Assembly: GCF_002113885.1 (NCBI RefSeq)
Contig: NW_018408821.1
Location: forward strand, 465,907-529,906
DNA from: Mizuhopecten yessoensis
Lineage: Eukaryota
Length of the DNA stretch: 64,000 bases
Direction of reading: 5' to 3'
How positions within the stretch are numbered: the first letter of the stretch is position 1; every line of letters begins with the position of its first letter. A program made the translations under genes and the position numbers. The notes below the pieces were generated by a model. The model saw only the letters and a program-made list of their open reading frames with translations. It searched no databases and had not been told where the DNA came from. Positions 14,070 to 38,780 of this stretch are shown here, in pieces.

Positions 14070-17000
14070 CTATGTCTCCTTTGACATGACTTTCCTGTTG
14101 GCCTTTCTTGGGTAAGATATGATCCGTCCACCCGATGCCATTTTTGTGAGTCTGCGCAAACGCGATTCTGTACTATCAGCATCTGAGTTGTTATCCTCCT
14201 GTTGTTCACCAGAGCCACTGGTAAACTCGTTGTAGATGGTATAATATCTCAAGGGATCAGGGCTGTCTTCCGTGTCACTCTCCTCTGCAGACGACAACTC
14301 CCACATAGTATAATCGTCCATAACTGACTCGGCAGGTTCTGACTCGGCGATAATTCCGTCTTTCATATTCTGGAGGATATCTTGGTTAGTTGCACATTCT
14401 GCTGCAAGTTCGTCACGTTTCTCAAGGACAGACGCTGTCTCGGCGATGTCATGATAGCTGTAATCCTGAACTGCAGATGACATCTTCAGAAAATATCTGC
14501 GAACCATTGTAACCGTTCCCGTAGAGGGATTAAACATCTTCACATTTTCAGAACTGACACTGGGTCCGCCAGCTGCCGAAGTCATATTATTATAACTGAA
14601 GAGGGAAAGAAGGTCCTCAAGGAGGATGATGACGGATAGTTGCTTAACCCTCCACTGAGAGTACCTGTTTTGCAGGAGGCGGGTACACGTAGATGACATC
14701 ATAGCTATGAGGGCGTTGATCAAGAGGATGTAGGTAGTCATAATGAAGAGGACGTAGAGGCTATAAGCTAACCACTTTTGCTTTGTCTGATCAAGGAAGA
14801 GCAATTCATTGATACCAATCATTAACTTAAACATTTTGAACAGTGACGCTCCATACATGGTACGATGTCCCGGTTCGTCTTCCGTTCCGTCAATGGCAGG
14901 CGTGTTTTTGTCCTGGTATACAACCGTCATCGTTGTGGTAAACGAAAACAGCTGTAAAGCTATTATTACTGAAAAACGGAAGAAGTCGCCAAAGACGACT
15001 CTCTGAATCATCGTCGTGAAGAAACCAAACAACCGCCAGCCTCCGAGGAAGAATGCATTGAACCACCACGCCGCTAGGACGGCTACTACCATAGGAATCC
15101 CATCATGGTTATACCAGTATCGGTGCATGATGGCGTCCGTGATGATTCCCACGGAAAAGACATAGATAAAACCAATGTAATTCAAATTATTGAGCATGTA
15201 TCCTAAAGTGTTTGGTTTCCGTATTTTCATCATTGTTTCCAACATCCCAATGATCAGATAAACGACGGCTATTGCAACCAAAATCCACCTTGTGATGGCG
15301 ACAAATCCTTCTTTAGTGACAGACGTTCCTGGTACTGGCGTAGTAGAGTCACTTGATGAGTTACCAGATGAGGAGCCAGGCTGCGAATCTGACACACTGA
15401 ATACGACCTCGGATCTGTTGACAGCAAAGGCGCTCAGGACAAGGACGAAAGCGTAATGGAATATCATCCAGGCTATGTACGGGACTCGGTAGAAATGCCA
15501 CTTGTTTTTAATGAGGAGCTTTATCGGTGGGAGGTCTATAAGAGCAGCAACATCAGAAAAACCCAGTTTAGAGTTACACATCATTTGCAGGATTGCTTCC
15601 CGTTTAGGATACCGCCTAAACAGTGAACAGCCTACTTCGGACTGGAGCTCACCTTCGTCATCAACACCCCGCTGACTGCAGTATTTGGCAATAGTGTCTA
15701 TCTCTGTAATGTCGTACGACTTCTCGTCGAACAGGCCGTCTCGTTGGCCGAGATGACAATACACGTCCTGTAGATTAAGAATATCGTTGAATATTTCCGT
15801 CAGTCCGTGCTTAGCGGCCAGTTCTAGCGGAGTGTAGTATTGGTTGTTCTTTATAAACCAAACGTGACGATAGTCGTACGTTACCGACTTTCTTGTCTCC
15901 TTTTCTCCTTCACCTGATTTCCTGTTTTCATGCGGATTGATCATTGCTTGGCCTTGCTGTTTTTTCTTCAAGTCTCGAAACTTATTCTCCAGCTTTTTCT
16001 TTTTCAGTCTTGTTTGCTTTGCCTTTTCCATCAGGTTCTTTATCTGTTCATGTATGCATGACGTCATCTTTCTAACATGTTTCACTTTGTCCCTGTACAG
16101 TGCAGCATACTCGATCAAGACGTGAAACACGGTGTCTCCATTCCCATTGATAACATAAGGGACTGCGCCGTATTTTATAAGTATCTTCACCATATATTGG
16201 TCATTCCGTAGTGCCGCCACAAATAATGGTAGCTCGCCCATCATGACTGTATGTTGAAAGTTAGTTCCAGTCGCTCGTACGTTTACCAACTTACGTATAT
16301 GCTTGTGAGAACTCAGCCAGGCCTTTTTCAAAATTATGTCAAATGCCTCCCGGTTTCCCGAGGCGATTGCTATGTGGAGAGGCGTCTGTCCAAAGTAGTC
16401 TGGATGCGTCCGCGGAATATATGCCAAATCCGGACAAATCTGGAGTAAGATACACAGGAGTTCTCCGGTATCTGGAAAGTTGATGATATAGTGCAGAAGC
16501 GTCTCATCTCTTTCATAGACATTTTCGTTCCTTTTTAGTTCGCGCTTGAACCGCCATTTTCTAACATACGTTTCATGCACAGATTTTGTGAATCGTGTGG
16601 CTAAGGCCGTGGCGAAGTGGAACTGGCGGGTATCCAGACATTGCTCGAACAATCGGAATGTTCTTTCGTCCTCGCTCTCGCCTAAAATGAAGAAATGACT
16701 CATTGTATTGCCTATACAATGTTACAACATCGGGATTTGTCTCAATACCGTAGCTGAAGTACGATAAAAGATGGTTTACTTTATATAAAACAAAACTGGT
16801 ATTTAAATGAAAACCAATTAAAGGTAAAACATATCCTGTAAAAATATTAATCATGTCATATCAAATGATCAAACTCGTTTAATTACTTCAATATGACATG
16901 GACAGTCGTGTAAGATCATTTATGTTCGTAGCGACATGGCACACATTTTAACCAGTGCTTTAACCCCAAAGTTAAAAATTGAACATAAGGATCGCTTTCA

Positions 17001-17565
17001 AGAAGATTGTAAACATCTTTCACAATCCGTGCCACGTTAGTAATACGCTTATTCCGTATGGGTCTGTGTACTTTTGAGTACATAATATATTATTTGTGTA
17101 TTTTTGAATACATAGTATATTAAAAGTTGTTGAAAATGAAGTTTTTATGGACTAAATACACATGCGTTTAGTTGTTTGGTGACGAGACAAATAGATATGT
17201 CAAGTTTTTCAGTTTACCATTGAATTAGCATTAAGCAATTTCAGAAGTCAAATAACTGTTTGACTGTACTTTAGAAAGGTCAAAACACATGTCAAATGAA
17301 ACTGTCGTTACCCAAGAGTTAAAGCACATTTTTTGGAGTCAAAAAATGTACACTCAAGGGTGTACTAAAAGTTGAGAAGTTAGGGGCAAAACTCTGCTGC
17401 AAAACTATTGTGAAGAATGTAATTAATTTAAAGAATACAATTATTTTGAACGTCATATATTACCGGCCTAGAAGAGAATTCATTTAATTATAAAATCTAC
17501 TTACCCTTATAGAATTGGCCCTTTTGAAAGGAGGAGAACCTGTTGGTCATCGAATCGTCATCCAT
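14070..17565 (-). CDS. TRPV-family cation channel, paralog A (~890 aa)
   Basis: complement(join(14070-16681, 17505-17565)), phase-1 GT-AG intron, exon 1 MDDDSMTNRFSSFQKGQFYK. Ankyrin repeats (GQTPLHIAI, GELPLFVAA, GDTVFHVLI, TPLELAAKHG), YDITEID linker, 6 TM segments, GDFFRFSVII, pore FKLMIGINE, S6 LLINALIAMM, TRP box QWRVKQL. Confidence 0.93.
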
Positions 17566-18239
17566 GTTGTCTTGTACAACGTAATGCCTGTACCGTGCCC
17601 TTGTTTGTTACAAGCTGTGCGGCCATTGTTTCGTAAATGGTAACCTGTATCTAAGACTATTGTTTAGTTGGAATTTTAGATTTGATTAAGATTGAAACAG
17701 TTTTATTGCCCTGTCACCTCAACGCGTATACTGGGAAGCACGTGCTCTGTCAAATGAGTATAGTTACAAGACTCGATTTCGATTGTGCTTGCATTAACAC
17801 TTGCTCTGAATGGACCCAAGCTTTGTTTGGGATTATCGGTACGTCAAGTGAATTTTAATACTAAAAACTATGCGACGCTATTGTTACGTAGATCTAACAA
17901 GGTTGTAGCTTGAAATTTGTAGATAGCACTTGGACGTACTCATGCCGTTATTTATTTATTCGGTACATACATACACTAGCTTCAAACAATTGTTCACGTT
18001 TAAAAAACAGACACACCGCGTTAAGTTTTGAATGGTTTGCTTATAGACATGTATTGTATTCTTGTATTCATTAAAGAAAGATCGATTGATTATTTGCTCT
18101 TGTTAAATAGACTTCTGTCATGCTTTTTAGGGGATACATGTATATGGTTTATAAAACAAAATGTATTTGCTTAACGTGGGAGCAGATGCCGTTATGTCGA
18201 ATGCTTACATTATAATGCAACGTTAGTATATATATATAT

Positions 18240-18653
18240 TTATCTCATTTCCATGTGTGTAAGATAGACCTGTCCAGGGTAAGTACACCCCATTTCACGT
18301 GACGTGACGTCACCAATTTGGAACTCTCCAATGCCGCAATGCGGAAAAGGCGACGTGATGAAATTAAAAACCTTTTACGATATATTTACCGTACACGTAA
18401 GGAAGATGTGATTAGTTTTCAATATAGGATATGTTAAATATGGCTGGCTGATTCGCGTTCGTCTAAAAAGCTCAGGGGGGAATTGATATTTTCAAAATGT
18501 TGGCCAGTCCAAATGCATTTTCATGGTTTCTAAGCTTATTCTGGTGGTTGGAATGAGAGAAAAATGTGCCCAAGGGTGAAGGAGAGGGATATTCCACTCT
18601 CGGGTGGAATTTCCCTCTCCTACACCCCGGCCTGAGCATGGAAGAGTCTTATA

Positions 18654-18655
<2 letters not shown>
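18240..18655. mobile_element. Hairpin-bearing interspersed repeat, possibly related to the 45660 family
   Basis: Internal inverted repeat GAGAGGGATATTCCACTCTCGGGTGGAATTTCCCTCTC and GTGACGTCA motifs; organisation resembles 45660-46420. Confidence 0.45.

Positions 18656-18656
<1 letters not shown>

Positions 18657-18690
<34 letters not shown>
18657..18690. repeat. (TG)n microsatellite
   Basis: About 17 TG units. Confidence 0.95.
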
Positions 18691-18691
<1 letters not shown>

Positions 18692-19331
18692 ACGCTTATT
18701 GCGTTTAATGGTAAACTGTACAATCGTGTACTGTTCTGTTAATTATTTGTACACGTTTTTTTACGGTATGAAGCCTACTAGTATTTTAATGATAGACTGG
18801 ACCCGGTTACGATGTAAAGCGTTGCTAGCTTTCTGTTTATGCGGAACAACCGGTTCGTCTGTTTTTAAATGAACCATGTTTTGATAAAAATCATGGCGGA
18901 CCTGCATTTTCAAGGCTCGCCTGAAAGCACCATCAGATTACTAGGTCCGAGCTTATTTCATAACCAAATAACTCTGGTTCGACCGTTTGAATTGCGATAA
19001 ACGAAAGCGACCTTGTCTCCGCCCGGTGAAACTATGAGATACGCTTTTGTTAGGATGGCTTAATATATTTAATATTTTGTATGACATTTGTTGTAGTTTT
19101 GCCTTTAGTAATCTCGGTCGTCCTAACTCGCTTTCCCTGTAAAGTGTTGGCTGGTGATGCTGATGATGAAGTTATTTTCGGTCTTCCATTGGCTACATCT
19201 GTTAACAAATATAACTATTTCAGAACAATGAAAAAGAAATTATAAACGATACAATTTCCTAAAGGAATGGTGTCTGATTTTGACTTCTTGAATATCTGTG
19301 ATTTGAGGCCTTTGGTATATATCGCGTTTCC

Positions 19332-19736
19332 TTATTAGGGCCCCGCGTCGGATATGCAGACGGACTATAGTAATCTATATGTCCGTCCGTCCGTCCACAC
19401 TTTCGTTTCCAGAGATTATTACGGAATCCATAAGACTGATCGGTTTGAATTGACATGGTGCTACACTGTGATATGTAGATATGGAATAAGGGTGTATAAA
19501 GTTTGTAAGTTCAATGTCAAGGTCACTGTTACTAAACTATACTGGGGTGTGCGTATGGTCCCAGTATCGGAATTCAAAAGACTAATCTTGAAATTTGACA
19601 TGATTATACACTGACATTTGGATGTGCTAAAGGTAATTGAACAAAGGTTTTAAGGTCAAGGTCATTGTTACTAAAATGGACCACGGGTATGGTCAGGCAC
19701 GTGGCGGGGCCCTTACTTTCCTGTCAGTGTTCTAGT
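19332..19736 (+). mobile_element. Non-autonomous Helentron-like element
   Basis: Subterminal IR AGGGCCCCGC / GCGGGGCCCT, (GTCC)n microsatellite, two internal units ending TCAAGGTCAxTGTTACTAAA, ends TTCTAGT. Confidence 0.65.
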
Positions 19737-21602
19737 GCATAAAGTACCCGATCAGAAATAATTTTAAAACTTTTACGTAATCTTTCGGTGAAATATTTTG
19801 TTGCATTCAATGTATATTGTTTGCGAGGCTTGGATATATGCTTAGTGATGCCATACTCATCTTTCAGCGTAATCACTTATCGTGATGAGTAAAGAAAAAA
19901 TCACGTATACATTTTGACGAAAATTACGTGAACTTCATGGACTGGATATATTAAGTAATCGGGCAAAATTCCACGTCTGTTTTCATGTTTGTTTTCTTCT
20001 TTTTCTTCTTCTCTATGTACACTCTCGTGCAGGACGAAGTCATTACAATATTTGTTGTATTGTTAATTCGTTACATATTCTGAACAATGCAACAGACAAA
20101 GATAACATTTTTAGAAAGGGATTTCGAGGTTTTCCTTACTTATAGCAATATTAAAGTTAAAAAAATAACACAAAGACAATTCAGAAAAAAATATATAGAA
20201 AAAACATGAAATTAATTTTGACTGAATACTTCTGTGCAGTCTATGTACATTGTGGGTTTCGGTGAGCTGGGCCCACCAAAATATTTCGTGTCCAATGAAA
20301 TAACGTCTTCGTTTGATTTAGAAATAATGTGACATTAACACGGGGCATATTTTGTATAAAATGAATAGAAAGAAATCAACACTGCTCACAACATGTACAT
20401 CGTATTACTTTTATTACAAGACAGATATATATTGATAAAGGGTTAATATATTTCTATATATGTAAAAACAAGACTTTCTCTAATATGTTTCGTCCCTCCC
20501 TACTACCATCTATCACCCCATCCCTTCATCCTACCAATCAAAAATTTTTTTGAACCAATAACAGCAAAAACTTTAACAAATAATTATTTTCTGATTTGAA
20601 ACAGTTTGGTTATATACTGATGGAGTGAACAAGAGGGAGCAATCCAGATTTTGACTGAAATTCCTGAATTATTTCTGATGAGCGGTTTTTGACATGACAG
20701 AAGTAGCAAACATAGAGATATAACTAATTGAAATATCTCAGAAAGTTCCAATGGAATATACTTAAAGGAACTTTATCGTACGCCATTGTGTTAATTAGAA
20801 ACATTATAGTGTTTTAAGCATACGGTCACATAGGCGCAAAAATAGTACAAGTGTACTTTGCAAAAAATGCTGCAAATTACGTTAGTTTCACGAGGAATTC
20901 ATTTTAGCTTTAATTCGTAAATAGACTCAATCGCGAATTCAAACTTCCATAAATACATGTATCCTTTGCATTTAAACTAACTACCAGTATTGAAAAATCA
21001 TCTTCTCAATCGTGAATGAATTGTATTTGTGAATTAACCTGTAAGCATGCATGGTTTCCAGTACGTACACGTGAGGATAAACTTACAAGAGTATTCATTA
21101 AATCACCCGTCGTTATGCAGTCTATATCACTCCTTACAAACACACACTATACAGTTACTAAGTTCTTAATTATACCAGTAATACAGGTCACCTACCACCA
21201 ACAAGTGTACCATGCTACCCATGTTTACGTGTCTATTAGGCCTAAATAAAAATTAAGCGCTAGCGAGCGACTCGGGAAACGGTCCGACTGCTAAAAAAAT
21301 CATTGATAGTTTCTACCGAAATTCATTTTGATGTTAAGTCCAGGTACAATATATTGTCCCCATTTAGAAATGAAGATCTGTTCAATGTTGAACTGATATT
21401 TATAAATATATGATATTCAAAGTGCTTATGTGAATGTATCATGGTTGTTAAACAAAATGAACGCATTGCTTCTGTTGACGGGTTCTACTGATTAGAGTTG
21501 ATTAAATCAAAGTTCATGCTTTTAACAAAACATTTTGACCTAAATACCCAAATGAGTAATCATTGATTGAAGCAGAAACATTTTATTGTGGCCTTATATA
21601 AC

Positions 21603-24340
21603 TTAAGTTTTCTCTTCTATACTTGATTCCTCCGACGATGACGCTTCGAAAGGTTCTACAACCGTCCCTCGTCTTCCAACATGGAACACCTCCGTGGCAG
21701 CCTTCCTCACCAATTCTTCATTCATTATGTCATAATCCGAATCATAATTCAAGTCATGTTTCAAATACTCGTAAAATATAGCCGGCACACGAGGTCGTGG
21801 TATTAGGTCCGACATGTCTGGTTCTAAGTCTGTCATATCTGATTCCTGCTGAGGCACGACTGGTTTAGTTTGTTGTCTTACAAACGGAAGAAAGAAAGCG
21901 GAAGCAGCCATCCTCTTAAGAATATTTTTGTTGATGTTGTTGTTGAGTGATTCCTGATTGCGTTTTTGTTGGGCCTCAGTTATTTCTTCAATGTCCTCCG
22001 CTTTCATTTCAATCATATCGTTTTGAAGGGTTTTCATATCCAGGAGATACCTGACCTGAGTCGTAAAAGTCTTTGTCACGGGGTCATACACTTTTTTCCT
22101 TTTTTCCTTTATGATCTCACTGCGCGTCACGGGATCATAGTAACTGAGAATCACATGGAGACAATTTTCGAGCATCAATATGACTGAAAGCTGTTGTATC
22201 CGCCATTCTGAAAATTTGTTTTGCAGGATGAAGGAGCACGTTGAAGACATCATAGCAATCAGGGCGTTTACCAGGAGAATGTACGTAGAAAGTATGTAAA
22301 CCACGTATAAAGAGTTTGTCAGCCAAGTCGACCTGGCTACTTTTGTTGAGTTGATCCCTCCGATTCCCAACATCAGGTTAAACATGGTGAACAGAGATGT
22401 GTCAAATGACTTCGTATAGGAGGGCTCATCTACGTTTGATTCGATGCTTGGGACGTTTTTACCTTGATACATCGTGTGGACACTGGCAGAGAACGATATC
22501 AGCTGGAATGCTATTATCACTGAAAAACGCAGGAAATCCCCAAAAATTACTCGTTTAATCATCACAGTGAAGAAACTGAACATCTTGAGTCCTCTTAGGA
22601 AAAACAAGTTGAACCACCATCCGGTTAGAACTGATATCAGAAGAGGCACCCTGTTGTGTTCGTAATCCACGAACTGCCAGATGATATCTGCAAGGAGACC
22701 CATCCCGCAGATCATCAATATACTGATGTAGTCCATGTTGCACTTCCAGTACAACTTGGCGTTCGGTTGTAGGAATTTGGGGATGATCGCCGTAACGCCC
22801 AAAACCACATAGACAAGTCCATAGACAAATGAACTCCACATACACAAATTGACATAGTTCACCTGGTGTGGGGATGGCATAGATTCTGCTGTTGAACCTG
22901 AATTGGAAGGATTGAATTTCAGTTCGGACAGGTTGACTGTGTACGCACTCAACAAGATAATAAAGATGAGGTGAATGGCCATCCACGCAAAGAACATCTT
23001 GCTGTACAGTTCCCATTTGAGTTTGATCAGACCTCGCAGAGGTGGTATTTCAGTGATTTCTACAATATCCTTTGGCCTCATCTTGTTTCCGAACATCATC
23101 TCAAAAACAGATTCCGATTTCACGCCTTTGAAATTGAAAGGCCTAACCGTTTGTTCTCCTGAGAGGAGTTGGGACTTGTAGTTGGTGATGGAATCTACCT
23201 CTGTGATGTCGTAGTGTTTCTCATCAAAAAGACCGTCATTTTTGTTTTCGAAACAGTAAACGCTCGGTAGATTAAGGATCTGGATGAAGATTTCTACCAG
23301 CCCATATTTTGCTGCAAGTTGAAGAGATGTAAGATTATGGTTATTCTTCATGTACCAGATTTGGCGCAAATCTTTGTCACTTGTGTTCTCAGTTTTTTCA
23401 GGATTAGTTCCTTCGTCAAAGGATGATTTTATTCTACCGTCATTCTCGTTTCGACTGTGTTTGTCATAACGCCGTTGCTTTCTCCTCGAATGTCTTTTCT
23501 GGTTTTCTACGACAACTTTCTTGTGCAGGAAGGTGATCATACGTCTAGCATCAGCTAATTTGTTTCTGTTAATCACGATGTACTTTATTATGGTATGAAA
23601 TACATTATCTCCCTTCCCATTCCTCACAAACAGTGATGCTCCTCTTCGAAGAAGAAGGTCAACAATGTTTTCTTTAAACGTTAGAGCACTGACAAACAAT
23701 GGTATTTGTCCCATCATAACGGAATTGTTGAAGATTTTGCCTGTAGCACGAGCATTCATTAGTGCACGCAACTTCACTTTCGAACGCTCTGCAACGTTCA
23801 GTATCTCCTCACAGGCCTGGACATTTCCCGTTACTACGGCAATATGAAGTGGTGTCTGTCCTGCAAACGCCATGCTGAACCTCGGCACCATGAGCAGGTC
23901 AGGACAGATGGCAAGGATGTGAATGATACAGGCGACGTTTTCCTCACTGTTATGCATCAGACATATATGAAGGAGAGTCTCGTCTGTCTCCATGCCGTCT
24001 TTCGATCTCCGCCAACGTAACAATGGTTGTCCATGAATGTCCTTGTTAAAATTCCGGAGTTGATCCCTCGCCAAGGAGAAGTTCCTGGTGCTGATTAATC
24101 TGTATACTTGATCGATTTCTCTATGACATTTTGTGTCTGTTGAAAGAAGATAAACATTTTGAGAATGAGATATGTTTTATGACAATAAGTGTATGACTCA
24201 ATACAGTATTCTGGATATTATTAAAACATAAATAATAAATGCTTACGTTTAGGTGTCGGCGTTGGTATTTCGGTATCTTTTCCAGGGCTTGCTGCTGTCT
24301 CCAAAGGGAACTGAACGAAGACCTTTTTCCTTTTTAACAT
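21603..24340 (-). CDS. TRPV-family cation channel, paralog B (~875 aa)
   Basis: complement(join(21603-24136, 24247-24340)), 110-bp phase-1 GT-AG intron, exon 1 MLKRKKVFVQFPLETAASPGKDTEIPTPTPK. Ankyrins (GQTPLHIAV, GDNVFH, TSLQLAAKYG), YDITEVD, GDFLRF, pore FNLMLGIGG, LLVNALIAMM, EWRIQQL. Confidence 0.93.
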
Positions 24341-27126: not shown

Positions 27127-30091
27127 TCATTGCATGGTTGACATCCATTTGCTAACACGAGCCTGAGTAGAGTTATCCTCAGGGATTTTAGGGAGCTCCT
27201 CCTTAAATTCACGGGTGTACGGCTTCAGTTTTGGCCCTTCAATGTCCCTCGTAAGGAAATCGTTCTCAACCAAAGGTTGTTCGTCACTCTTTTTCGGGCC
27301 AGAAATAGATTCCTCCATATTTTGTTTGAGTTTTTGGTTGACAGTTTTCCTGATCTCCTCCTGAGTTCTCCTTTTCATCACGTCGGTTTCCTCTTCGGTG
27401 AATGTCATCTTGCGAGACTGCATGTCCAGCATGTAACGCTGTTGGTTCCGGGAGGTCATGTTTATGATTGGATCGTATATGTCTTGGTAGCGCTTGTTTG
27501 CTGGACTGCGGGTTAAACGTTGGAGAAAGGAGACAAGGAACAGATCCTCGATGAAAAGGATGATTGACAGCTGCTGGATTCTCCACACCGAGTACTTCTC
27601 GGAAAGCACGCTCTCGCACGTGGATGACATCATGGCTATCAGGGCATTAAGCAAAAGGACATATGTCAGAAGGACAAAGAGAACAAAGAGAGTCAGAGCC
27701 AGCCATTTGACGCGAGCTTGGGACAGACATTCGATCTCCCCGAGCCCCAGCATCAGGTTGAACATGGTAATAAGTGTTGTGAAGAAGTGGTTGTCATCGC
27801 TTCCGTCAATGGCAGGAACATCTTTTCCTTGAAACATCGTGTGCATACACGTCGTAAATGCGAACAACTGGAACGCAATTATGACGGAAAATCGTAGAAA
27901 GTCCCCAAAAATTACCTCCTTTATCATAACCGTGAAAAAACTAAAGAGATGCCAACCACGGAGAAAAAAGACGTTGAACCACCAACCTGAGAATAGTGCG
28001 ATGATAAGTGGAATTCCGTCATGTCGTCCCACTGCCTGTGTTATCAGAACGTCCACAATCACAGCCAAAGCAAAGATCAACATCAGAAGGATGTATTCAA
28101 TGTTGTGCATGTAGTATCTATCCGGATTTGGTCGTTTTAGCTTCGAAATAACACAGAGGATGACAATAATGACGTAGAAGATGGCTATGATGAATGCAAT
28201 CCACTGGAACGAGGTGAGGAATAAGCGTAAAGACTGATTGTTCTTGAAGTAGTTACCTAACCCCGTGCCGGTGTTTTCTATCTCCGACTCGTGCCAGTAG
28301 GAACGTTCTACCGCGTATACACTCAGAAAAACCATCAGTACCACCTGGATCAGCATCCACAATGAATATAGAGAGACAACATTCTTCCATTTCTTCTGTA
28401 TCAACTTCTTCACTGGCATCATTTCTATGATGATAGAAGAAAATTTTCGAGTGTAGTTCTTATCAAACAGCATTTCCAGGATAGATTCCTTTTTTGGGAA
28501 GACGATTCGACAGCTGCTGCAACAAGTGTTCGTGTTCGTGTCTTCCTCGTTTGGCGTTTCTTCAATTTCTGTGTTAGCAATGGAATCTATTTCAGTGACG
28601 TCATACTTTTTGATGTCAAATAAACCCTCATCCTCGTTCTGAAAGCAATAGACATCCTTCAGTTCTAGGATGTATTCAAATATGTGAACCAGTTGGTGTT
28701 TTGCCGCTAATTTCAAGGGAGTTAACCCGTCTTTATCCTTCATCAGCCAGAGATGAACATAATTGTTAGAACGTGTTATGTTGCTCTTAATATTGTCTTC
28801 GTCAGGATTGTCAGAATTTTCTAATCGATGGATATCTTCCTTCTCCATTTCTTCTTTCTTCTTCTTGGTGATGTCTCTGAGGTGCCCGGTGAGATGACTC
28901 ATCATGCGTTTGACTTCGTCTTCTTTGTCTCTTTTTCTGCTCAGATACCTAATCATAGAGTGAAATATCGTATCATAACTTTCATTCCTTGTGCATATAT
29001 TAGCTCCAAAATCAATCAGCTTGTCTACCATGCCGAAATCAAATTTAAGCGCAGCAACAAAAAGCGGTAATTCTCCCATCATGACTGTTCCTTCAAATCT
29101 ACTTCCGGTCGCCCTAGTGTTTAGTAGGTTCTCAAGCATACGGGGTTTTTCACCAACTTCGTCTTCATTCTCTCCTTGTTTTTTTAGGACTATTTCATCA
29201 CATCTTTTTGCAGTCCTAAGAATGAGAGCTATGGCCGCATTGTTGGCTCGCGTAATGGCGATATGAAGTGCGGTCTGCCCCTTGTACTCCGATCCCTTCT
29301 TCGCCTCGGAGACCAGCACCGGGAACTTGTCCAAGATAGCACTAACAATCCCGCCGGTGTCGTACTTGGCTGCATGATGGAGAATAGTCTCGTTGGTTGT
29401 GCGTTCGTTTGGTTTCTGGGGTATGTCGAGTTGAAATTCCCTGATGTCTAGTTCCAAGGCTACAAATTTTTGAAGTGTTGCCTTGGCTTCATCGATGTCC
29501 TTCTCCTCAATGAACTCCTTCAAAAGTTGTATCAGTTCAGTCCCTACAAAAATTATAAATCTTCTATTAGTTACAACACAGACATTAGCATCCTTTTGTG
29601 GGACGAGTTTGTGCATATATACAAACTAACGCTAAGGCCGACTTCAATAGTTCAAAAATTGTTAAAATCTAGAACAAAATTCTAAGGTAATTGCTTGTTA
29701 TAGATCTATATATTCATCGTAAGCATGAACTAAAATAGTTCGTCATTGATTCAAATGGACAAAAGCAAATACATTCAGAATTTAGTAAATCAGTATAATG
29801 AATGCAGTGTTTACTTTATATTATTCCGATAAGAATTTAATATTACCGAGATATACTTCTGGGTTGGAAGTAAATTATACTGCTACAACATATCACTGTA
29901 AATTATTTGAGGACTTAAATATAATTGAATTCTTCAAACTGCTTACCGTCTTCGTATCTCCTAGCAGATGCAAGGTCCTGGCTATCCAGCGATTCTGTCT
30001 CCCTGTAAGCAAGAGGTTCTCCATTTTCTAAGAGATACCTCAAGTGGGTCAGAGTAGCAGGGTCTAAATGTATACCCGTACCGTCTGCCAT
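27127..30091 (-). CDS. TRPV-family cation channel, paralog C (~853 aa)
   Basis: complement(join(27127-29543, 29947-30091)), phase-1 GT-AG intron, exon 1 MADGTGIHLDPATLTHLRYLLENGEPLAYRETESLDSQDLASARRYED. Ankyrins (ETILHHAAK, GQTALHIAI, GELPLFVAA, TPLKLAAK), YDVTEID, GDFLRF, pore FNLMLGLGE, LLLNALIAMM, VWRIQQL. Confidence 0.93.
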
Positions 30092-32039
30092 TTTAACGTT
30101 TTATTTACCAAACGTTTGGTCCGACATGGTGATTGTATGTGTATTGGTATAGGCAGATACACATCCTGTTATAATCAATGGCGTTTATGGGGCCGAGGAT
30201 GGGGGATATAATTTTATTAATACATTTACCAAATAAATGTTTTTATGTTGAATCTTTCATGTATCCGACAAAAACGAAAGAGAAGTCAAATATTGTTTTA
30301 TAGAAGTACATTAAGGGGAACCTGGCAGCTTGGCCTACAGCAGTGCCGAAAGGAAGAATTAGATATTTAGTGGGTAATCCGTCTCTCCCCTCTCGACGCC
30401 CTCTATCAGATTGTGTATAGAAACACATATACGTCACGCTTTTGTGTTTTAAACAGATCAGTATAATGAGATAGGGAATGCGATACGCCTTTATTAAATG
30501 TTGGGGACATGTCAGCGCCATTGCACACAATGATTGTTATCTGTACAAACAAACCATTCAACTGTGTAACTAAGGACGCGCTCATAACGCATACAGCAGT
30601 TCCACTCATGTATGTAACGATCGGCTGTTTGTTTAACGCACAGTGCATTCGGGTATATGGAATTATCTCCCCTTTTTAACTGCCTGTCTGAATTGTAGTT
30701 TTTACAAGCCTTAGTCCGTGTATTAATAGATTTCCGGCTTATATGAAGATAGAATGAAATAGATAAGTTTCTTGCATGTAAAATATCATTTAGAGACAAA
30801 ATCAGATAAAATTGCAAATATAGTTTATCATATAATTCTAAATGATTCTGATATCACTATTGAGCTAGAAATATCAGCTCTGCTGCACACATTTTCTTTT
30901 GTGTCAAAGTATTCAAGTGTAACGCGGGCCTTGATGTTTAAGTAACGGCGCATTCGGGTACTGAGAATCGTCTCCCTTATTTAGCTGTTTTGTAGAATTG
31001 CGCTGGTAAGAACACTTGAGGTAAAGGATACTTACAATTTAGTCTATATCATTACTATTATCACAGATGTGAAATATTGGTTAACGTCTGTTACAAAAGA
31101 AGTATTCCTTAAAAGTCACATGTTGCAAATGCAGTTTATAAAATTACAGTTGTTCGAAAGAGTGTTAGAAAGCAGAAAAAAAGATGATAAAAAAGTTAAA
31201 AAAATGCAGGGATCGAATCCAGGACTTTTACATTGAAAACCGTACACTTTGCCAAAGTTGCCATATAAAAATAAAAAATAAACAGCACCAAAGCGAAAAA
31301 AACACACTAAATTTTTGACAAGTCAAAAAATATATGAGTGGAACTTTTCTTCGCGATTGTAACTGACGCAATAGTATCAGTAACTTTAACTGAGTCGCCA
31401 GATAATGTTAAAGTATCTTTTTTTTCTTTTTGTGATTGATTGCTGAAAATTTCAACAACTATAAAAAAAAAATCTCAAGATATGGTAATACTAATTTCTT
31501 GTGGCGTTAATTTCTTAAATTGTGTAATATAAATAATGGAACCGGCTTATATAAAGAGCACTTTTCGAGAAAAGTTGTTTTGTAAATATTTTCATGTTGA
31601 ACGCTGATCAAAACGGTTCGATATGACATCAATTTTAAGTGATACAAGTTAATCACAAGTGTACATATCGCTACACATTACACATCACCATTGGCCACTC
31701 AGGTAAATCACGTATTGCACGTAAATTACACATCTCAATGAAAAAGTAATTCGATAATAAGCTAGACTGAACTGCTCCTCCTACTGTCGTCGACGCATGC
31801 GTATATTGATGTTAAAAGGTTTGTTAATAGACGCAAGAGTCACGAAGGTGATCAAACGAAGAACGTTCTTCTAATCACATCTCCATGCAAATGTATCGTT
31901 CTCGTGCATATCTAAATACTATTGATCTTACATTAATTATGTAAATGAGTTGTATCAAATTATACATTTCACTATTGTTTGCCCTGATGTAAGCGCGCAG
32001 GGGGTCTTAATGTGGAATGAATATCATATACGATAAAAT

Positions 32040-33680
32040 ATTTCTTATATAGTAAATAAGATATCTTATATAAGATTATATATACTTATAAAAGATATCT
32101 CATTTAATTTCTACATAAGATCAAATAAAACATAAGATATCTTACATCGTAGATAAGATATCTTATATAATATATAAGATATCTTATACACAATATTAGA
32201 AATAGCATCTATTTAAGATTTTTATATATTATATTAGATATCTCATCTATATAAGATATTTATATATTATATTAGATATCTCATCTATATAATATTTTTT
32301 TTAATATTTGATATCTCATCTATATCAGATATTTAGATGTGATATTAGATATCTCATCTGTATAAGATATTGATATAGTATATTAGATATCTCATCTATA
32401 GAAGTTGTTTAAGATATTTTAGATATCTCATCTATATAAGATATCGCATCTTTATAAGATATCTCATCTATATAAGATATTTGTATATTATATAAGATAT
32501 CTCATCTATATAAGATATTTATTTGTTATATAAACATTCTCATCTATATAAGATATCTTATATTAGATACATCATTTTAGATATCTCATCTATATATCTT
32601 ATTTTGATATCTCATCTATATAATATATCTTAGATATTATTTTGATTTATCATCTATATTAGATATTTATTTATTATATAAGACATCAATATCAGATATT
32701 TATATGTTATTTTAGATATCTCATCTATATAAGATATCTTATTTTAGATATCTCATCAATATAAGATATTTATATTATATAAAATATCTCATCTATACAA
32801 GATATTTATATGTTATATTAGATATCTTTTCTTTATAAGATATTTATATGTTATATAAGATATCTCATCTATACAAGATATTTATATATGATATAATATA
32901 TCTCATCTATATAAGATATGTATATGTTATATAATAATTCTCATCTATATAAGATATCTTTTATGTTATTTTAGATATCTCATCTCTATTATATATTTAT
33001 ACCTATATAAGATATCTCATCTATATACGATATTTATATGTTATTTTAGATATCTCATTTATATAAGATATCTTATATATTATTTTGATATCTCATCCAT
33101 ATAAGGTAATTTGTATACTATTTTAGATATCTCATCTATATAGGATATTGATATATTACATAAGATATCTCATCTATATAAGATATTTATATATATGACA
33201 TTAGTTATCTGATCTATATAAGATATTTTTATGTTATATAAGATATCTCATATATATAAGATATTTATGTTTTGTATAAGATATCTCATATATATATAAG
33301 TTATTTATCTGTTATATTAGATATCTCATCTATATAAGATATTGATATGTTATGTAAGATATTGATATGTTATATAAGATATTGATATGTTATAAAAGAT
33401 ATTGATATGCTATATAAGATATCTCATCTTTATAAAACATTTATGTATGATATTATATATCTCATCTATATAAGATATTTATATGTTATATCAGATATCT
33501 CACCTATATAAGATATTCATATTTTATATTAGATATCTCATCTATATAAGATATTTATATATTATATTAGATATCTCATCTATATAAGATATTTATATGT
33601 TATATAAGATATGTCATCTAAATAAGATATTTTTATGTTATATAATATATCTCTATTGTCTTATATAAGATCTCTTATAT
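32040..33680. repeat. ~1.6-kb AT-rich satellite array
   Basis: Dozens of copies of AGATATCTCATCTATATAAGATATTTATATGTTATATA-like units, built from ~19-bp subunits in a ~38-bp period. Confidence 0.93.
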
Positions 33681-34751
33681 AATTCGATGAACTACAGGAT
33701 CGACATTGCTCCTTTAATAAATGTTACGTTGGCTTGCCACACTTATGCATTTTCACGTCCGGTCGGGGAATCAAAACCCGGTCGTCTGTGTTAAAGGCGC
33801 CACCCGACAACCCATTCCTGTGTAAACATTCTATGTTAAACGTTTTTGGCTGACATAAGAAATATCTAATAACTTTTGTATTAATAACGCTTTCATCCTA
33901 AACACGCATTTTAATAATTATCTTAATTATCTTTTACACCATGTGAATGACTAATATGGACACGCAACTATTTTGAACCAAACATTAATTTGTAATTATA
34001 TCGTAAATCGTTAGAAATATTTTTTGTCGTTTATTAGGGTTTTCCCATTCAGTGTTTTGAACCACTTTATTGTGGAATATTGTTCTACAACGATACTTAC
34101 TACTGTTCGTTGGGATTGTTATCTTTTTCGTTCCTAATTGCATGCTTCCTTCTTTCTTTCTCTTATGATAAAAATACTTTAATCTAATTTTGAGAACAGA
34201 ATTTTCTTAATGCCTACATGCTTACATACTCTTTATCCAGCAGTTAGTCAATAAATATGCTAATGACAACTTTTGTAAAGTTTAAAATGTTTCCCTTTCT
34301 ATCCTAACCTTTTAAACATTACATCACGATTTCATTGATTTTAGTAGGAATCATGCTTAAAATTCGTTCTAAAATTTAAATGCAGGTTCCCGTTAATTTT
34401 GAGTACTTTTAAAATATTGTTATCACATATTTCTTGTTATACGTTAGAAATGACTCTGTACGGATAATTTAAAAACAATTATATACGCTGCTAATTCACA
34501 ACTGAGCAGGTTGTAATCTGTACTATGTCCATACGATTTCTCTGCGTAGATACAGAGCAAGACTTAATGAAATAAATTTTAGCAGTGTTTACCTATTACT
34601 TACACGTAAATCCCAAGTAAAAATTCTATATGCATACACTACTGGTCTTAATCTTAAGAATTTGCTATCACTGGATACATACGTGTTTATACAAGTTTAA
34701 AGCCTCTTTGATGCTATAACAAACCCGATGTCTAATTAACCAAGAGTGAGA

Positions 34752-34817
34752 CATTGACATCAGGCGAGAACTCATATATAACCGCATTGACATCAGGCGA
34801 GAACTCATATATAACCG
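34752..34817. repeat. Perfect 33-bp tandem duplication
   Basis: CATTGACATCAGGCGAGAACTCATATATAACCG occurs twice in tandem. Confidence 0.9.
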
Positions 34818-35766
34818 CTGTTCAGAAACTACTAATGCATGTGTGATTATGAAATCAGGAGAAACTAAGTCCTGACTCATTTCGATTATAACAAACGCTT
34901 TTATATAGGTAATAAATATTTTAATTAATTCAATTAAAATATAAACTAGGCATCATCATATCGCCTGACTGAATGTTAATGAACGAATACATGCGATCAA
35001 CTGTATTGATTATATCACGTTATGCGTTTAGATTGATTTTGTAATTGGTATGACACGAGCATGAATTGAATTTTAAATGTTTAGCAATTGAAAAAATGGA
35101 GTAATACATTTTCAGTTCACCGTTATTCAGATTAACTGAAACGTTATATTTTCATATCAAATTATGCCTTCTTCACAATGACTATTAAATGTAATTTTCA
35201 ATATTCCGTTCCACTAGACAAGTTTTGTTGACCCTTAACCCTTTGCAATTTCAGACCATATGAAATAATCAATACAAATTCACTTATTAGCCTAAATGGA
35301 GGCCTTAGTTCTAACGATCTATCGAGTTCCACCGAATCAGACGTTCTAGAATATCGTTAAAACACATTCTAATCGTAATGTGGACCGTTACATGAGTCCT
35401 CAAAACTGTCACAGAGTCGCAAGTGATGCATCCAAATGAGCCCGGAATATCATCTACAACAGTATATCAATATCCATGTAAAGTTTCGTTTGTATTGCGC
35501 CAGTAGAATCTTAGCAAATTTCCGGAAATCTCTGGACAGAAGATATACAATATTAAAGACGCAGCAAAAACTTTAAGTTCCAAAACTCCCCGGAAGAAAA
35601 GAAATATCTTATTTCTTCCGTGATCTTGAATTATCGTGAATTGAATATTATTGATAGAAAAACCGCACTTCAAAAGTATTTTTCATAATAGCGGTTGTCT
35701 CTAATTCAGACAACGTTTTGAAACGGAGCGCAATCGTCGCATTGACATGTACATAATCAAATGCTA

Positions 35767-35960
35767 GTCGGGTGGCGCAGTGAATAGCGCACTCGTCTTT
35801 CACCAAGGCGGCCGGGGTTTGATTCCCCGATCGGATGTGCGGAGATATGGGGTCACCTGTCACGTGGGTTTTTTCCAGGTACTCCGATTTCCTCCTGCAC
35901 GTTAACATCCGAGCCAACAAGAATGATTAATACAAGTTGTAATAATTTGTTTCATGATTG
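35767..35960 (+). mobile_element. tRNA-derived SINE (V/Meta-SINE-like core)
   Basis: A box GGTGGCGCAGTGAA, B box GGTTTGATTCCCC, core GTGGGTTTTTTCCAGGTACTCCGATTTCCTCC. Reverse fragments of the same family at about 31975-32020, 33745-33810 and 61625-61705. Confidence 0.7.
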
Positions 35961-36171
35961 TTGTAAAAGAATTTTTCTTTTGAATCAATATGACGTAGCA
36001 CATGTTAGTTGTCGCAGTACCACAATGATAGTGTAATTTACATGTAGTGGGTTCATAAAGTAAGATTTCAAAGTAAATGTAATTAAAATAAGAATATTAT
36101 ATCATCACCAGTATCGATGATATTTTGGCTGGTATATATATCGGACAAACAGCTTACAAAATAATTATCAT

Positions 36172-38780
36172 CTATTGGATGTGTTCGTGGTAAACCACGT
36201 GTCCTAACCCCGCAGATTTTGACACGTGTTTGGTGTTATGTATCTGACGCGCCGCTTGCAAGTCGCGTTCGGTTGGTTCCACCTCTGTCGCGCCGACTTC
36301 GTGATAGATTGGGACGATGGAAGCAGTTGGGGCCGCGATAACAGTAGGGGCCAACAGATAGTCGTCAGTCTCTGTTTCCCTTGACACAAGAATAGGCTTC
36401 CGTTCCTCCTTTTTCGGCACCATGAATTTGCTTTCCTTTTTAATGGACTGTAGAAGCTCTGTATTGACAGTGTTTGCTATTTCTGCCTGTGTTTTCTTCT
36501 GAATTATTTCAGTGTCCTCCTCGGAAGCGAAGTCACCCTGTAAGGACTGCATCTTCAGGTAATAGCGGACATGTTTTTTTATTGTCATTTTCGACGGATG
36601 GAATATTTCCATCTTTGTTAACTTTGCCGGACATCGTAAGATCCTATCCATACAAAAGAGACAAAGAAGGTCCTCAATGAATAATATGACAGACAACTGT
36701 TGTATCCGCCATTGTTCGTACCGATTTTCTAGAACCGTGCCACATGTCGCTGACATCATAGCAATTAGTGCGTTTAACAGAAGAACGTATGTTAACAGAA
36801 CAAATCCAATGAAGAGAATGATAGATAACCATGGCACTCGAGCTTCACGTAACCCATTGATATTTGACAACCCCAGCATTAGACTAAACATTGACAACAA
36901 GGTGGATCCAAACTCCAGCAATGTGCTCGTTTCTGTTGAAGAGTAAATTCCTTCAATGTTCGGAATACCTTGGCCTTGATAGACCGTATGCATACATGTT
37001 GTGAATGCTACAAGTTCAAGCCCGATGAATACGGAAAACCGGAATAAGTCGCCGAATATGACACGCTGTATCATGACGGTAAAGAAGCTAAACACCTGCC
37101 AACCCCGTAAAAAGAAAACGTTGAACCACCAGCCCGTCAGCAGAGCAAAGACAAGAGGGACACCGTCATGAACCTCGAGAGCAAACGTCAGCAGTGTATC
37201 CAGTAGTAAACATATAGCGAACATAAACACCATGGTTATGTACCCGATGTTGTGTTGCCAGTAACGAGAGCGATGGGGGCGTTTCATTTTGGGGAAAATG
37301 AGGAGTAGTCCGATAAGAAAATATATTATTCCAAATGCAAACTCTATCCATTGTGACACATTAACTATCCAAACGGAGATCACGTGATCGGTGTTTGTAT
37401 AATTTGCTGCCCTTGGGAACTTTGGGAAGTTCAGGCTAGTCCGTTCCACTGCAAACACACTGAGGACGACCATCAGAATAAAGTGGATCACCATCCAGAA
37501 TATGTACGTGCTCTTGTACAAATTCCATTTTGCTTCAATGAGAACTTTGAGTGGTTGAAGCTCCATTAACTCGAAGGCGGCGGAACTCTTGTAGTTATTA
37601 TCGAACATCATTTCCAAGATGGAGACCGTCGTAACTGACCCATGGATACCTCTACAACAACTTCGCCCAGTGTTACCATCATCATCATCATCATCATCAT
37701 CATAATCATTCACATCATCGGCAGACATTGTTTGTGATTTCGTGTTTCCTATGGAGTCAATCTCTGTGATATCGTACAGCTTAATATCAAAAAGGCCGTC
37801 ATCGGCACTGAACAAGCAATAGATATCCTCTATGTTGAGAATGAACTCGAATAAGGTGACCATACCATACTCAGCGGCTAGCTGTAACGGTGTTTGCGAG
37901 TCGTCATTTTTGAGAAACCAGACGTGAGTGTATTCATTACAGGTTGTTTCTTCCCACTTTCCTTTTGTTTCTTTCTTTGGTTGAGCGTCCCAAGCTATTT
38001 TCGTCTTTTTCTGGTCTAGTGGAGGGAAGTTACGAGTGGATGACAGACTGTGATGATAACCATTTCCGATTGGTTTTACTTCACTGTCGTCCTCATTTTC
38101 TGTTTCCTCCTCGTCCTCCTTCTCTTCGTCCTTCTTTTTTGACGGTGCTTGTTTCTGTATGGTAGTTTTGGTCAGTTGAACAAGGCGGTCATGCAGATAT
38201 TCCATCATCTCCCGTACCTCGCATGCCTTGTCGGGATACACAGCGGCGTATTTGATGAGGGAGTGGAATATGGTATCTCCTTTACTATTTTGTTGATATA
38301 ACTTAGCTCCCGTGTCTAACAACTTATCCACCATATCTTTGTCGAATTTAAGCACAGCTACAAATAATGGTAGCTCTCCCATCATAACAGTGTTAATGAA
38401 CAACCTCCCCGTCGCTCTAGTACTCAGCAAAGTGCGCAGAGATTGCGGAGACCGTGCGGCAACATTCAACATTTGATTAAATGCCGTCAAATTGCCCTTA
38501 GTGATAGCGATGTGGAAAGCTGTTTGACCGGCATACTGCTCACACGAACGCGCCTTGAGAATGAGATTTGGCGCGATTTGTAGGATACGTGACGTGAGCT
38601 CACCATCATCTTGGTATTTGGCGGCAATATGGAGAAGCGTTTCGTCTGTATGGTAGCGATAGTCCAACACCTGAAGTTCGTCAGTTTGTCTCTGGAGTTT
38701 CTCAAGTATCCACCGAGATCGGGCGGAGTTTCGTTCCTGTATATAGCGGACTAGTCTATCCAGCTTCGCCGTGGTAATGC
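36172..38780 (-). CDS. TRPV-family cation channel, paralog D (main exon; ~870 aa total, first exon uncertain)
   Basis: Open frame from the AG acceptor at 38781 (phase 1) to the stop at 36172. Ankyrins (ETLLHIAAK, GQTAFHIAI, GELPLFVAV, GDTIFH, TPLQLAAEYG), YDITEID, GDLFRF, pore FSLMLGLSN, LLLNALIAMM, QWRIQQL. Candidate phase-1 start exons: ATG-T at 39135-39132 or ATG-CCT-G at 42560-42554. Confidence 0.92.

What the first reader, a model, noticed from the sequence alone, without database searches (positions are those of the whole stretch)
14805..36873. Each TRPV paralog has a different selectivity filter, and two lack the acidic residue
Seen: after the pore helix the filters read GINE (A, 14805-14816), GIGG (B, 22356-22367), GLGE (C, 27736-27747) and GLSN (D, 36862-36873), while S6 (NALIAMM) is invariant. 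Established: the equivalent TRPV1 motif is GMGD, and its Asp, like the TRPV5/6 filter Asp, governs Ca2+ permeation and ruthenium-red/Mg2+ block. Inference: A and C are Ca2+-permeable, B and D have reduced Ca2+ selectivity or are modulatory subunits, so subunit mixing could tune filter charge from 0 to 4. An automatic 'TRPV5/6-like' label would be misleading because the TIID filter is absent.
Basis: partly seen in the sequence, partly recalled or inferred. Interest (0 to 1): 0.72.

Follow-up and report, generated by a model that had tools for sequence, protein, structure and literature searches.

The report
Scallop TRPV channel array, divergent pore filters
Four neighbouring ion-channel genes of the Yesso scallop differ at the pore residue that normally lets calcium through, and two have lost its negative charge in a way that other scallops have kept, so the difference probably matters, but no ion measurements exist.

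Summary
The genes lie on the minus strand at exactly the stated coordinates. The filters read GINE (A), GIGG (B), GLGE (C) and GLSN (D), and S6 NALIAMM is identical in all four.

The window is from Mizuhopecten yessoensis. A-D are old tandem paralogues, 36-43% identical. Each has a tiny 5' coding exon and one roughly 2.5 kb exon. NCBI labels B 'TRPV6' and C 'TRPV5-like'.

- **Alignment:** The stretch from pore helix to S6 aligns without gaps to TRPV1, TRPV2 and TRPV3. Filter residue 4 corresponds to TRPV3 D641 and TRPV6 D541. AlphaFold models of B and D place the tetrad in the loop after the pore helix.
- **Orthologues:** Pecten maximus and Argopecten irradians keep the gene order D-C-B-A. They also keep residue 4: G in B (4/4 sequences), N in D (3/3), E in C (5/5), and E in A for three scallops (one unnamed relative has S).
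- **Selection:** All four genes are under purifying selection (dN/dS 0.035-0.21). D is the most constrained.
- **Direction of change:** Sister bivalve clades carry D or E at this position, so the neutral filters are derived. Loss of the acid is also recurrent, with at least 5 changes among 49 molluscan relatives.

Reduced Ca2+ permeation in B and D is a sound inference from TRPV5 D542A. It is untested here, and nothing bears on heteromer charge tuning. This is a modestly interesting variant of a known family.

The parts
14070..16681 (-). Gene A, large exon. The ORF is open 14070-16703. A likely splice acceptor (..cattttag|GC) sits at 16682/16681, so the start codon is probably in an unmapped upstream exon.
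   Evidence: ORF of 877 aa; Ank hits; the Argopecten orthologue P0125 aligns from its residue 21 at 16682; acceptor sequence
14805..14816 (-). A filter tetrad GINE (aa 630-633 of the ORF)
14697..14717 (-). A S6 motif NALIAMM
21603..24134 (-). Gene B, large exon
   Evidence: ORF; NCBI model P0121 is 100% identical and maps to 24134-21618; AlphaFold model with TRPV fold
24245..24340 (-). Gene B, 5' coding exon (residues 1-32 of the NCBI model)
   Evidence: tblastn of P0121
22356..22367 (-). B filter tetrad GIGG (aa 570-573). It lies in the loop after pore helix 557-569 and before S6 583-618.
22248..22268 (-). B S6 motif NALIAMM
27127..29544 (-). Gene C, large exon
   Evidence: ORF; NCBI model P0001 is 100% identical
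29939..30091 (-). Gene C, 5' coding exon (residues 1-~50 of the NCBI model)
   Evidence: tblastn of P0001
27736..27747 (-). C filter tetrad GLGE (aa 624-627)
27628..27648 (-). C S6 motif NALIAMM
36172..38781 (-). Gene D, large exon. The acceptor ..ttttctag|GC is at 38782/38781. Orthologues begin MPGI.., so the start codon lies in an unmapped upstream mini-exon.
36862..36873 (-). D filter tetrad GLSN (aa 600-603). It lies in the loop after pore helix 587-598 and before S6 613-639.
36754..36774 (-). D S6 motif NALIAMM

Best explanation
The region holds an ancient four-gene tandem array (order D-C-B-A along the minus strand) of a bivalve-specific branch of the TRPV cation-channel family in the scallop Mizuhopecten yessoensis. 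All four are intact working subunits. Each has an ankyrin-repeat domain, six transmembrane helices, a pore helix, an S6 with the conserved Asn and Ile-Ala-Met-Met gate region, and a TRP helix. After duplication the pore filters diverged. A and C kept the ancestral acidic residue (Glu) at the position of TRPV1 D646, TRPV3 D641 and TRPV5/6 D542/D541. They are therefore expected to be Ca2+-permeable non-selective cation channels of the TRPV1-4 type. B replaced the acid with Gly and D with Asn before the scallop lineages split, and both have kept the change under strong purifying selection. Removing this carboxylate ring in TRPV5 abolishes Ca2+ permeation and Mg2+ block while monovalent current remains. 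The most likely consequence is that pores made of B or D, alone or mixed, bind divalent cations weakly, carry mainly monovalent current, and are less sensitive to Mg2+ and ruthenium red. Shown here: gene anatomy, homology of the residue, conservation, synteny and selection. Inferred: the effect on ion selectivity.
For: Identity and family: C and B are 100% identical to NCBI M. yessoensis proteins named TRPV5-like and TRPV6. All best PDB hits are TRPV channels, led by TRPV6 at E 4e-30. Ank domains are present. AlphaFold models of B (pLDDT 78.9) and D (74.1) show pore helix, loop and S6. The B model matches TRPV6, TRPV5, TRPV3 and TRPV2 over about 665-730 columns by Foldseek. Residue homology: gap-free alignments to TRPV6, TRPV3 and TRPV1/2. 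Conservation: B is GIGG, GIGG, GLGG and GLGG in four sequences. D is GLSN in three scallops. C is GLGE in four scallops, plus GLSE in one relative. A is GINE, GLTE and GLTE. Synteny: D-C-B-A order is kept in Pecten maximus and Argopecten irradians. Selection: dN/dS is 0.08-0.19 for A, 0.12-0.21 for B, 0.05-0.10 for C and 0.035-0.08 for D. Polarity: A-D and their orthologues form one clade (SH-aLRT 100), and its sister bivalve clades carry GLGD, GLDD or GLND. Function of the residue: TRPV5 D542A loses Ca2+ permeation, Mg2+ block and ruthenium-red block but still conducts monovalents (PMC10897480). Neutralising the acids in TRPV1 and TRPV4 lowers divalent permeation (PMC4164786).
Against: There is no electrophysiology for any member of this clade. 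Transcription of B and D could not be shown. In TRPV1-4 the narrowest part of the filter is formed largely by backbone and by Gly/Met (background knowledge, not tested here), so loss of one side chain may change selectivity less than it does in TRPV5/6. Acidic residues remain in the turret before the pore helix of B and six residues after the tetrad in D.
Confidence: 0.55

Rival explanations
1. B and D are not stand-alone channels. They are partner subunits that assemble with A and/or C, so the array encodes heteromeric channels whose filter charge is set by subunit composition. This is the reader's 'charge tuning' idea, by analogy with the Nanchung/Inactive and OSM-9/OCR-2 pairs.
For: Invertebrate TRPV partner pairs with different filters are established (PMC4164786), and a Nanchung-Inactive complex structure is in the PDB. 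All four genes have stayed adjacent and in the same order in three scallop genera. D is the most conserved paralogue, which would fit a constrained assembly partner.
Against: Nothing here tests assembly or co-expression. Tandem order is also kept by simple descent. The filters lack the aromatic-rich motifs that mark the known obligate pairs (one search compared). Many TRPVs work as homomers.
Confidence: 0.2
2. The filter differences are functionally near-silent. Permeation is set by backbone carbonyls and vestibule charges, so all four have similar non-selective cation pores, and the paralogues differ instead in gating stimulus or in the tissue where they are expressed.
For: Loss of the acid happened at least 5 times among 49 molluscan relatives, for example GFTS in venerid clams. 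Xenopus TRPV5/6-like proteins have NVIN. This suggests the position is tolerant. The turret keeps several acids in B and D. Most sequence divergence between the paralogues lies outside the pore.
Against: Within each orthologue group residue 4 is fixed. That is unexpected for a neutral site over a synonymous divergence of about 0.7-2. Mutating this residue changes divalent permeation in every TRPV tested.
Confidence: 0.17
3. B and/or D are decaying or non-conducting copies, that is pseudogenes or dead pores.
For: Their filters lack the canonical acid. A and D are not found as M. yessoensis entries in the protein database. The P. maximus copies of A, C and D show frame breaks in the assembly.
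Against: B and D have uninterrupted ORFs of more than 820 codons. dN/dS is 0.035-0.21. The S6 gate and TRP-helix residues are invariant. The models are confident. The P. maximus frame breaks also affect acid-bearing A and C, and NCBI flags the C model as 'low quality', so they look like assembly indels.
Confidence: 0.03

Closest known systems
Vertebrate TRPV1-4 (thermoTRPV) pore, especially TRPV3 (GLGD, D641) and TRPV1 (GMGD, D646)
   Same: Same gap-free pore helix, filter and S6 layout, with 33 residues from the first filter Gly to the S6 Asn. C (GLGE) fits the G(M/L)G(D/E) pattern quoted in PMC4164786. The B pore domain scores best against TRPV3 (E 3e-12).
   Different: B has Gly and D has Asn where all TRPV1-4 have Asp or Glu. 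A has Ile-Asn (M. yessoensis) or Leu-Thr (other scallops) at positions 2-3. Overall identity is only about 20-25%. The S6 motif NALIAMM resembles TRPV5/6 NLLIAMM more than TRPV1 NMLIALM.
Vertebrate TRPV5/TRPV6 epithelial Ca2+ channels
   Same: Best full-length sequence and fold matches. The Glu of A and C aligns with D541/D542. The S6 motif is similar.
   Different: There is no T(I/V)ID filter. B and D naturally carry what in TRPV5 is the D542A-type loss of the acid, which abolishes Ca2+ permeation (PMC10897480). Orthology to TRPV5/6 specifically was not resolved here.
Molluscan 'TRPVC/D-like' channels (abalone and oyster TRP gene surveys)
   Same: Same broad clade. Haliotis, Ostrea, Tegillarca, Dreissena and venerid proteins are the nearest relatives outside scallops. 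Lineage-specific tandem expansion is reported for oyster TRPVs (PMC8004665).
   Different: The surveys read here (PMC8004665, PMC8539334, PMC12980990) do not analyse pore filters. The four-gene scallop array with fixed E/G/E/N filter states is not described in them.
Nanchung/Inactive and OSM-9/OCR-2 heteromeric TRPV pairs
   Same: TRPV subunits with unlike filters that work together. This is a precedent for asymmetric pores.
   Different: Those filters are aromatic-rich (for example GDYNY or GEF..), and the genes belong to the other TRPV subfamilies (TRPVA/B). No evidence of co-dependence exists for the scallop genes.

Membership tests
TRPV subfamily of TRP channels | N-terminal ankyrin-repeat domain | tested here: met
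   Pfam Ank, Ank_2, Ank_3, Ank_4 and Ank_5 hits in all four. The ARD is modelled at pLDDT >90 in B and D.
TRPV subfamily of TRP channels | Six transmembrane helices with a re-entrant pore helix and filter loop between S5 and S6 | tested here: met
   AlphaFold secondary structure of B and D. All top-50 Foldseek hits for the B model are TRPV chains.
TRPV subfamily of TRP channels | TRP helix after S6 with the conserved Trp | tested here: met
   The ..(Q/E/V)WR(I/V)(Q/K)QLS.. stretch aligns to TRPV W(K/R)(L/A)Q.
TRPV subfamily of TRP channels | Closest solved relatives are TRPV rather than other TRP subfamilies | tested here: met
   All 60 listed PDB sequence hits are TRPV1-6, OSM-9-like or Inactive.
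TRPV5/6 (Ca2+-selective epithelial channels) | Filter T-(I/V)-I-D with a ring of four Asp | tested here: not met
   The aligned tetrads are GINE, GIGG, GLGE and GLSN. B and D have no acid at this position.
TRPV5/6 (Ca2+-selective epithelial channels) | Specific orthology to vertebrate TRPV5/6 | tested here: inconclusive
   My tree has only three groups (TRPV1/2, TRPV5/6, molluscs) and no outgroup beyond them, so it cannot resolve this. Full-length scores favour TRPV6/5, and pore-only scores favour TRPV3. PMC12980990 classes molluscan relatives as undivided 'TRPVC/D-like'.
TRPV1-4-type pore | Filter G-(M/L)-G-(D/E) | tested here: inconclusive
   The result is mixed across the four genes. It is met by C (GLGE). 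A is partial (GINE; GLTE in other scallops). B (GIGG) and D (GLSN) fail at residue 4.
Obligate heteromeric TRPV pairs (Nan/Iav type) | Aromatic-rich filter motifs and mutual dependence for function | tested here: not met
   The motifs are absent (one search compared with the motifs quoted). Mutual dependence is not testable with these tools.

The most novel reading that the evidence does not exclude
B and/or D are naturally Ca2+-impermeable, monovalent-selective TRPV channels. Alternatively they are obligate neutral-filter partners that pair with the acidic-filter A or C to give two-fold symmetric pores. Either arrangement would have been fixed in scallops since before the Mizuhopecten, Pecten and Argopecten split, giving a natural experiment on how the TRPV filter acid sets divalent selectivity.
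Probability: 0.3. Interest if true: 0.6.

Novelty: new variant of a known kind. Interest (0 to 1): 0.38.

Why it matters
The acidic filter residue is the best-established determinant of Ca2+ permeation and of Mg2+ and ruthenium-red block in TRPV channels. Here evolution has made the classic mutants (acid to Gly, acid to Asn) in two paralogues and kept them under strong constraint, next to two paralogues that retain the acid. That gives four closely comparable natural channels for testing how much the carboxylate ring contributes in a TRPV1-4-type pore. It also raises the question of whether neutral-filter TRPVs act alone or as partners. For genome annotation, it shows that 'TRPV5-like' and 'TRPV6' names on molluscan genes do not imply a Ca2+-selective pore. 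The practical weight is modest. Neutral filters recur in related bivalve channels, and nothing yet links these genes to a physiological role.

Tried and rejected
- **Reads on B plus part of C:** The call was counted and the cap is one, so no read evidence on expression or splicing could be obtained.
- **Sequencing runs:** The look-up of sequencing runs found 18 runs holding B, but none is on record as RNA. This says nothing about expression.
- **Logan contig of B orthologue P0124 (L005):** I hoped it was a transcript. It still carries the polypyrimidine-CAG acceptor in front of the large exon, so it is genomic or unspliced.
- **Phylogeny for the TRPV5/6 question:** I first read the tree as placing the molluscan clade outside TRPV1/2 plus TRPV5/6. 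With only three groups and no further outgroup that cannot be inferred, so I dropped the claim.
- **Mixture-model tree:** It did not finish in time. I used the LG+G4 quick tree instead.
- **Papers:** A search for M. yessoensis TRPV naming found nothing. Scallop, oyster and abalone TRP surveys do not treat pore filters.
- **Earlier scan notes:** They held nothing on these genes.
- **Big protein-representative search:** Not run. The family is not in doubt and the claim does not rest on absence of relatives.
- **Pseudogene reading:** Rejected on ORF integrity and dN/dS.
Full report
**Observation**

On the plus strand the four sites translate to stop-rich nonsense.

| Gene | Pore helix end, filter, next residues |
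|---|---|
| A | ..FKLMI-GINE-LLFLD |
| B | ..FNLML-GIGG-INSTK |
| C | ..FNLML-GLGE-IECLS |
| D | ..FSLML-GLSN-INGLR |

Each is followed 33 residues later by NALIAMMS(S/A)TC.

**What the genes are**

The window carries four long minus-strand ORFs:

| Gene | ORF coordinates | Length |
|---|---|---|
| A | 14070-16703 | 877 aa |
| B | 21603-24074 | 823 aa |
| C | 27127-29616 | 829 aa |
| D | 36172-38670 | 832 aa |

- C is 100% identical to an NCBI Mizuhopecten yessoensis protein named 'TRPV5-like'.
- B is 100% identical to one named 'TRPV6'. The window is therefore Yesso scallop.
- Pfam finds only ankyrin repeats. Every solved relative is a TRPV channel, with TRPV6 and TRPV5 best at E about 4e-30 and TRPV1 at about 1e-23.
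- The paralogues are 36-43% identical to each other, so the duplications are old.

Mapping the NCBI models and the orthologues onto the window shows a shared gene structure. Each gene has a short 5' coding exon and one exon of about 2.5 kb that encodes nearly the whole protein.

- B: exon 1 at 24340-24245, large exon from 24134.
- C: exon 1 at 30091-29939, large exon from 29544.
- D: the reading frame is open up to a clear acceptor (..ttttctag|GC) at 38782/38781, and orthologues start MPGI...
- A: an acceptor-like ..cattttag|GC sits at 16682/16681, where the Argopecten orthologue's alignment begins.
- The first exons of A and D were not located.

**Homology of the filter residue**

- HMMER aligns C 'LGLGE' with TRPV6 'LTIID'.
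- The B pore domain alone aligns without any gap to TRPV3, 'GIGG' against 'GLGD'.
- MAFFT aligns all four without gaps to vertebrate TRPV1/2 'GMGD' from pore helix to S6.
- AlphaFold2 models were built with a 39-sequence alignment. In B the tetrad lies in the loop between the pore helix (557-569) and S6 (583-618). In D it lies between 587-598 and 613-639.
- The B model matches TRPV6, TRPV5, TRPV3, TRPV2, TRPV4 and TRPV1 and the Nanchung-Inactive complex over about 650-760 alignment columns.
- B has no Asp or Glu anywhere from the pore helix to S6. D has one Glu, six residues after the tetrad and next to an Arg.

On sequence and monomer models, then, no alternative acid sits in the B or D filter. 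Tetramer models could not be made.

**Do orthologues keep the filters?**

Word searches with C, B and A and four genomic look-ups gave orthologues from Pecten maximus, Argopecten irradians, Ylistrum balloti and unnamed transcriptome or metagenome sources.

| Gene | Filter tetrads across sequences |
|---|---|
| B | GIGG (Mizuhopecten), GIGG (Pecten), GLGG (Argopecten), GLGG (unnamed) |
| D | GLSN in all three scallops |
| C | GLGE in four scallops, GLSE in a more distant relative |
| A | GINE (Mizuhopecten), GLTE (Argopecten), GLTE (Pecten genomic copy), GLTS in an unnamed relative |

Residue 4 is therefore fixed in B, C and D, and acidic in A of the three named scallops. Positions 2-3 drift more.

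The gene order D-C-B-A on one strand is the same in Pecten and Argopecten.

**Selection**

Pairwise dN/dS of the Mizuhopecten large exons against Argopecten and Pecten is 0.08-0.19 for A, 0.12-0.21 for B, 0.05-0.10 for C and 0.035-0.08 for D. Synonymous divergence is about 0.7-2. All four are under purifying selection, and D, which has a neutral filter, is the most constrained. This excludes the pseudogene reading.

The Pecten copies of A, C and D show frame breaks. Because these also hit the acid-bearing genes, and NCBI flags the C model as low quality, I take them for assembly indels. That is unproven.

**Direction of change**

In a maximum-likelihood tree of 54 proteins (LG+G4, SH-aLRT), A-D with their orthologues form one clade of 16 rows (support 100), and each orthologue group has support 100.

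- The nearest other bivalve clades carry GLGD, GLDD, GIDD or GLND. This includes a fifth M. yessoensis gene on another scaffold, P0127, with GLDD. The acid is therefore ancestral, and Gly (B) and Asn (D) are derived.
- Loss of the acid is not unique to this array. Eighteen of 49 molluscan sequences lack it, which needs at least five changes by parsimony.
- A whole venerid-clam clade reads GFTS or GLTS, and two Xenopus TRPV5/6-like proteins read NVIN.

This lowers the surprise.

**Likely mechanism**

In TRPV5, D542A removes Ca2+ permeation, Mg2+ block and inward rectification but leaves monovalent current, and D542 is a key determinant of ruthenium-red block (PMC10897480). Neutralising the acids in TRPV1 and TRPV4 lowers divalent permeation (PMC4164786).

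By homology:
- A and C should be Ca2+-permeable non-selective cation channels.
- B and D should bind divalents weakly.

This is inference, and I give it about 0.55. In TRPV1-4-type pores much of the constriction is backbone and Gly/Met (background knowledge, not tested here), so the effect could be smaller than in TRPV5/6.

Nothing here tests it, and the scallop filters lack the aromatic motifs of those pairs.

**Family placement**

Membership in TRPV is met on every feature tested: ankyrin domain, 6TM plus pore loop, TRP helix, and nearest solved relatives.

Membership in TRPV5/6 specifically fails on the defining TIID filter. Orthology to TRPV5/6 is unresolved, because my tree lacks an outgroup beyond the three groups. 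I withdrew an early reading of it for that reason.

- Full-length scores favour TRPV6/5.
- The pore domain alone favours TRPV3.
- The filter pattern is TRPV1-4-like, while the S6 motif is closer to TRPV5/6.
- A recent abalone survey classes such molluscan genes as undivided 'TRPVC/D-like' (PMC12980990).

**Expression**

I could not show transcription.

- No run that holds B is on record as RNA.
- A 3.4 kb Logan contig of a B orthologue is genomic, because it keeps the intron acceptor.

**Prior knowledge**

TRP surveys of Chlamys farreri, Crassostrea gigas and Haliotis discus hannai (PMC8539334, PMC8004665, PMC12980990) list TRPV genes and tandem expansions. The scallop paper notes a one-exon TRPV. 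None of them analyses pore filters. The genes themselves are already in NCBI.

**Verdict**

The finding is a real, conserved and probably functional divergence of the key pore residue within a known family. It is worth an electrophysiology experiment but is not a new kind of system.

Noticed in passing
window 14070-38781 (all four genes): Each gene has one exon of about 2.5 kb encoding over 95% of the protein, plus a tiny 5' coding exon. From background knowledge, vertebrate TRPV genes have many exons. This suggests a retrocopy-like ancestor that later duplicated in tandem. A Chlamys farreri survey also mentions a one-exon TRPV (PMC8539334).
   Followed up: partly
window 19053-19202 and 21603-21618: The NCBI model of B splices out five codons before the ORF stop to a 3' exon at 19202-19053. 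The Pecten and Argopecten orthologues end inside the large exon, as the read-through ORF does. The true 3' end of B is uncertain.
   Followed up: partly
window 14070-16703 and 36172-38781: No M. yessoensis database protein matched A in the search with A. None matched D in the searches with C and B, which did list the Pecten and Argopecten D orthologues. Both genes may be unannotated or modelled differently in the public annotation.
   Followed up: no
L001 19213-21829; L001 2087-4529; L003 11901-14382: The Pecten maximus copies of A, C and D each align in two frames, so they carry frame breaks. NCBI marks the C model 'LOW QUALITY'. These are probably assembly indels, but real decay of A in Pecten is not excluded.
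   Followed up: partly
proteins P0015, P0017-P0023 (Ruditapes, Mercenaria, Mactra and unnamed): A whole venerid and mactrid clam clade of this TRPV family reads GFTS, GLTS or GFTA at the filter. It lacks the acid at residue 4 but has Asp two residues later.
   Followed up: no
proteins P0040, P0044 (Xenopus TRPV5 / 'calcium transporter 1'): These frog TRPV5/6-like proteins read NVIN where TRPV5/6 have TIID, so neutral filters also occur in vertebrate TRPV5/6-like paralogues.
   Followed up: no
window 3664-3981 and 9830-10108, + strand: Two exons of a queuine tRNA-ribosyltransferase (TGT/QTRT1-like) gene, with Pfam PF01702 at E 9e-19 and 1e-22. This is the neighbour downstream of gene A.
   Followed up: partly
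window ~56860-60700, + strand: A degraded LTR-retrotransposon-like element. A gag-like ORF with a weak CCHC zinc-knuckle hit, an RT-RNase H ORF and an integrase core ORF lie in separate broken ORFs.
   Followed up: partly
window 8567-9003: A 38-bp minisatellite with 11.5 copies and 84% matches. It produces a spurious repetitive 153-aa ORF.
   Followed up: no
window 12533-12814: A 143-bp tandem duplication (2 copies, 96% matches) lies next to the small LTR/SINE-like element that an earlier scan note placed at 11753-12159.
   Followed up: no
window 63311-63895, - strand: A 194-aa ORF rich in repeated Arg-Arg-x-Ser/Thr motifs with no Pfam match. It may be an exon of a phosphoprotein gene.
   Followed up: no
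window ~40440-40720 and 32001-34000: A run of N (assembly gap) lies at about 40.44-40.72 kb. The 32-34 kb block has a very low measured GC of 0.20. The gap lies upstream of D, where its first exon might be.
   Followed up: no
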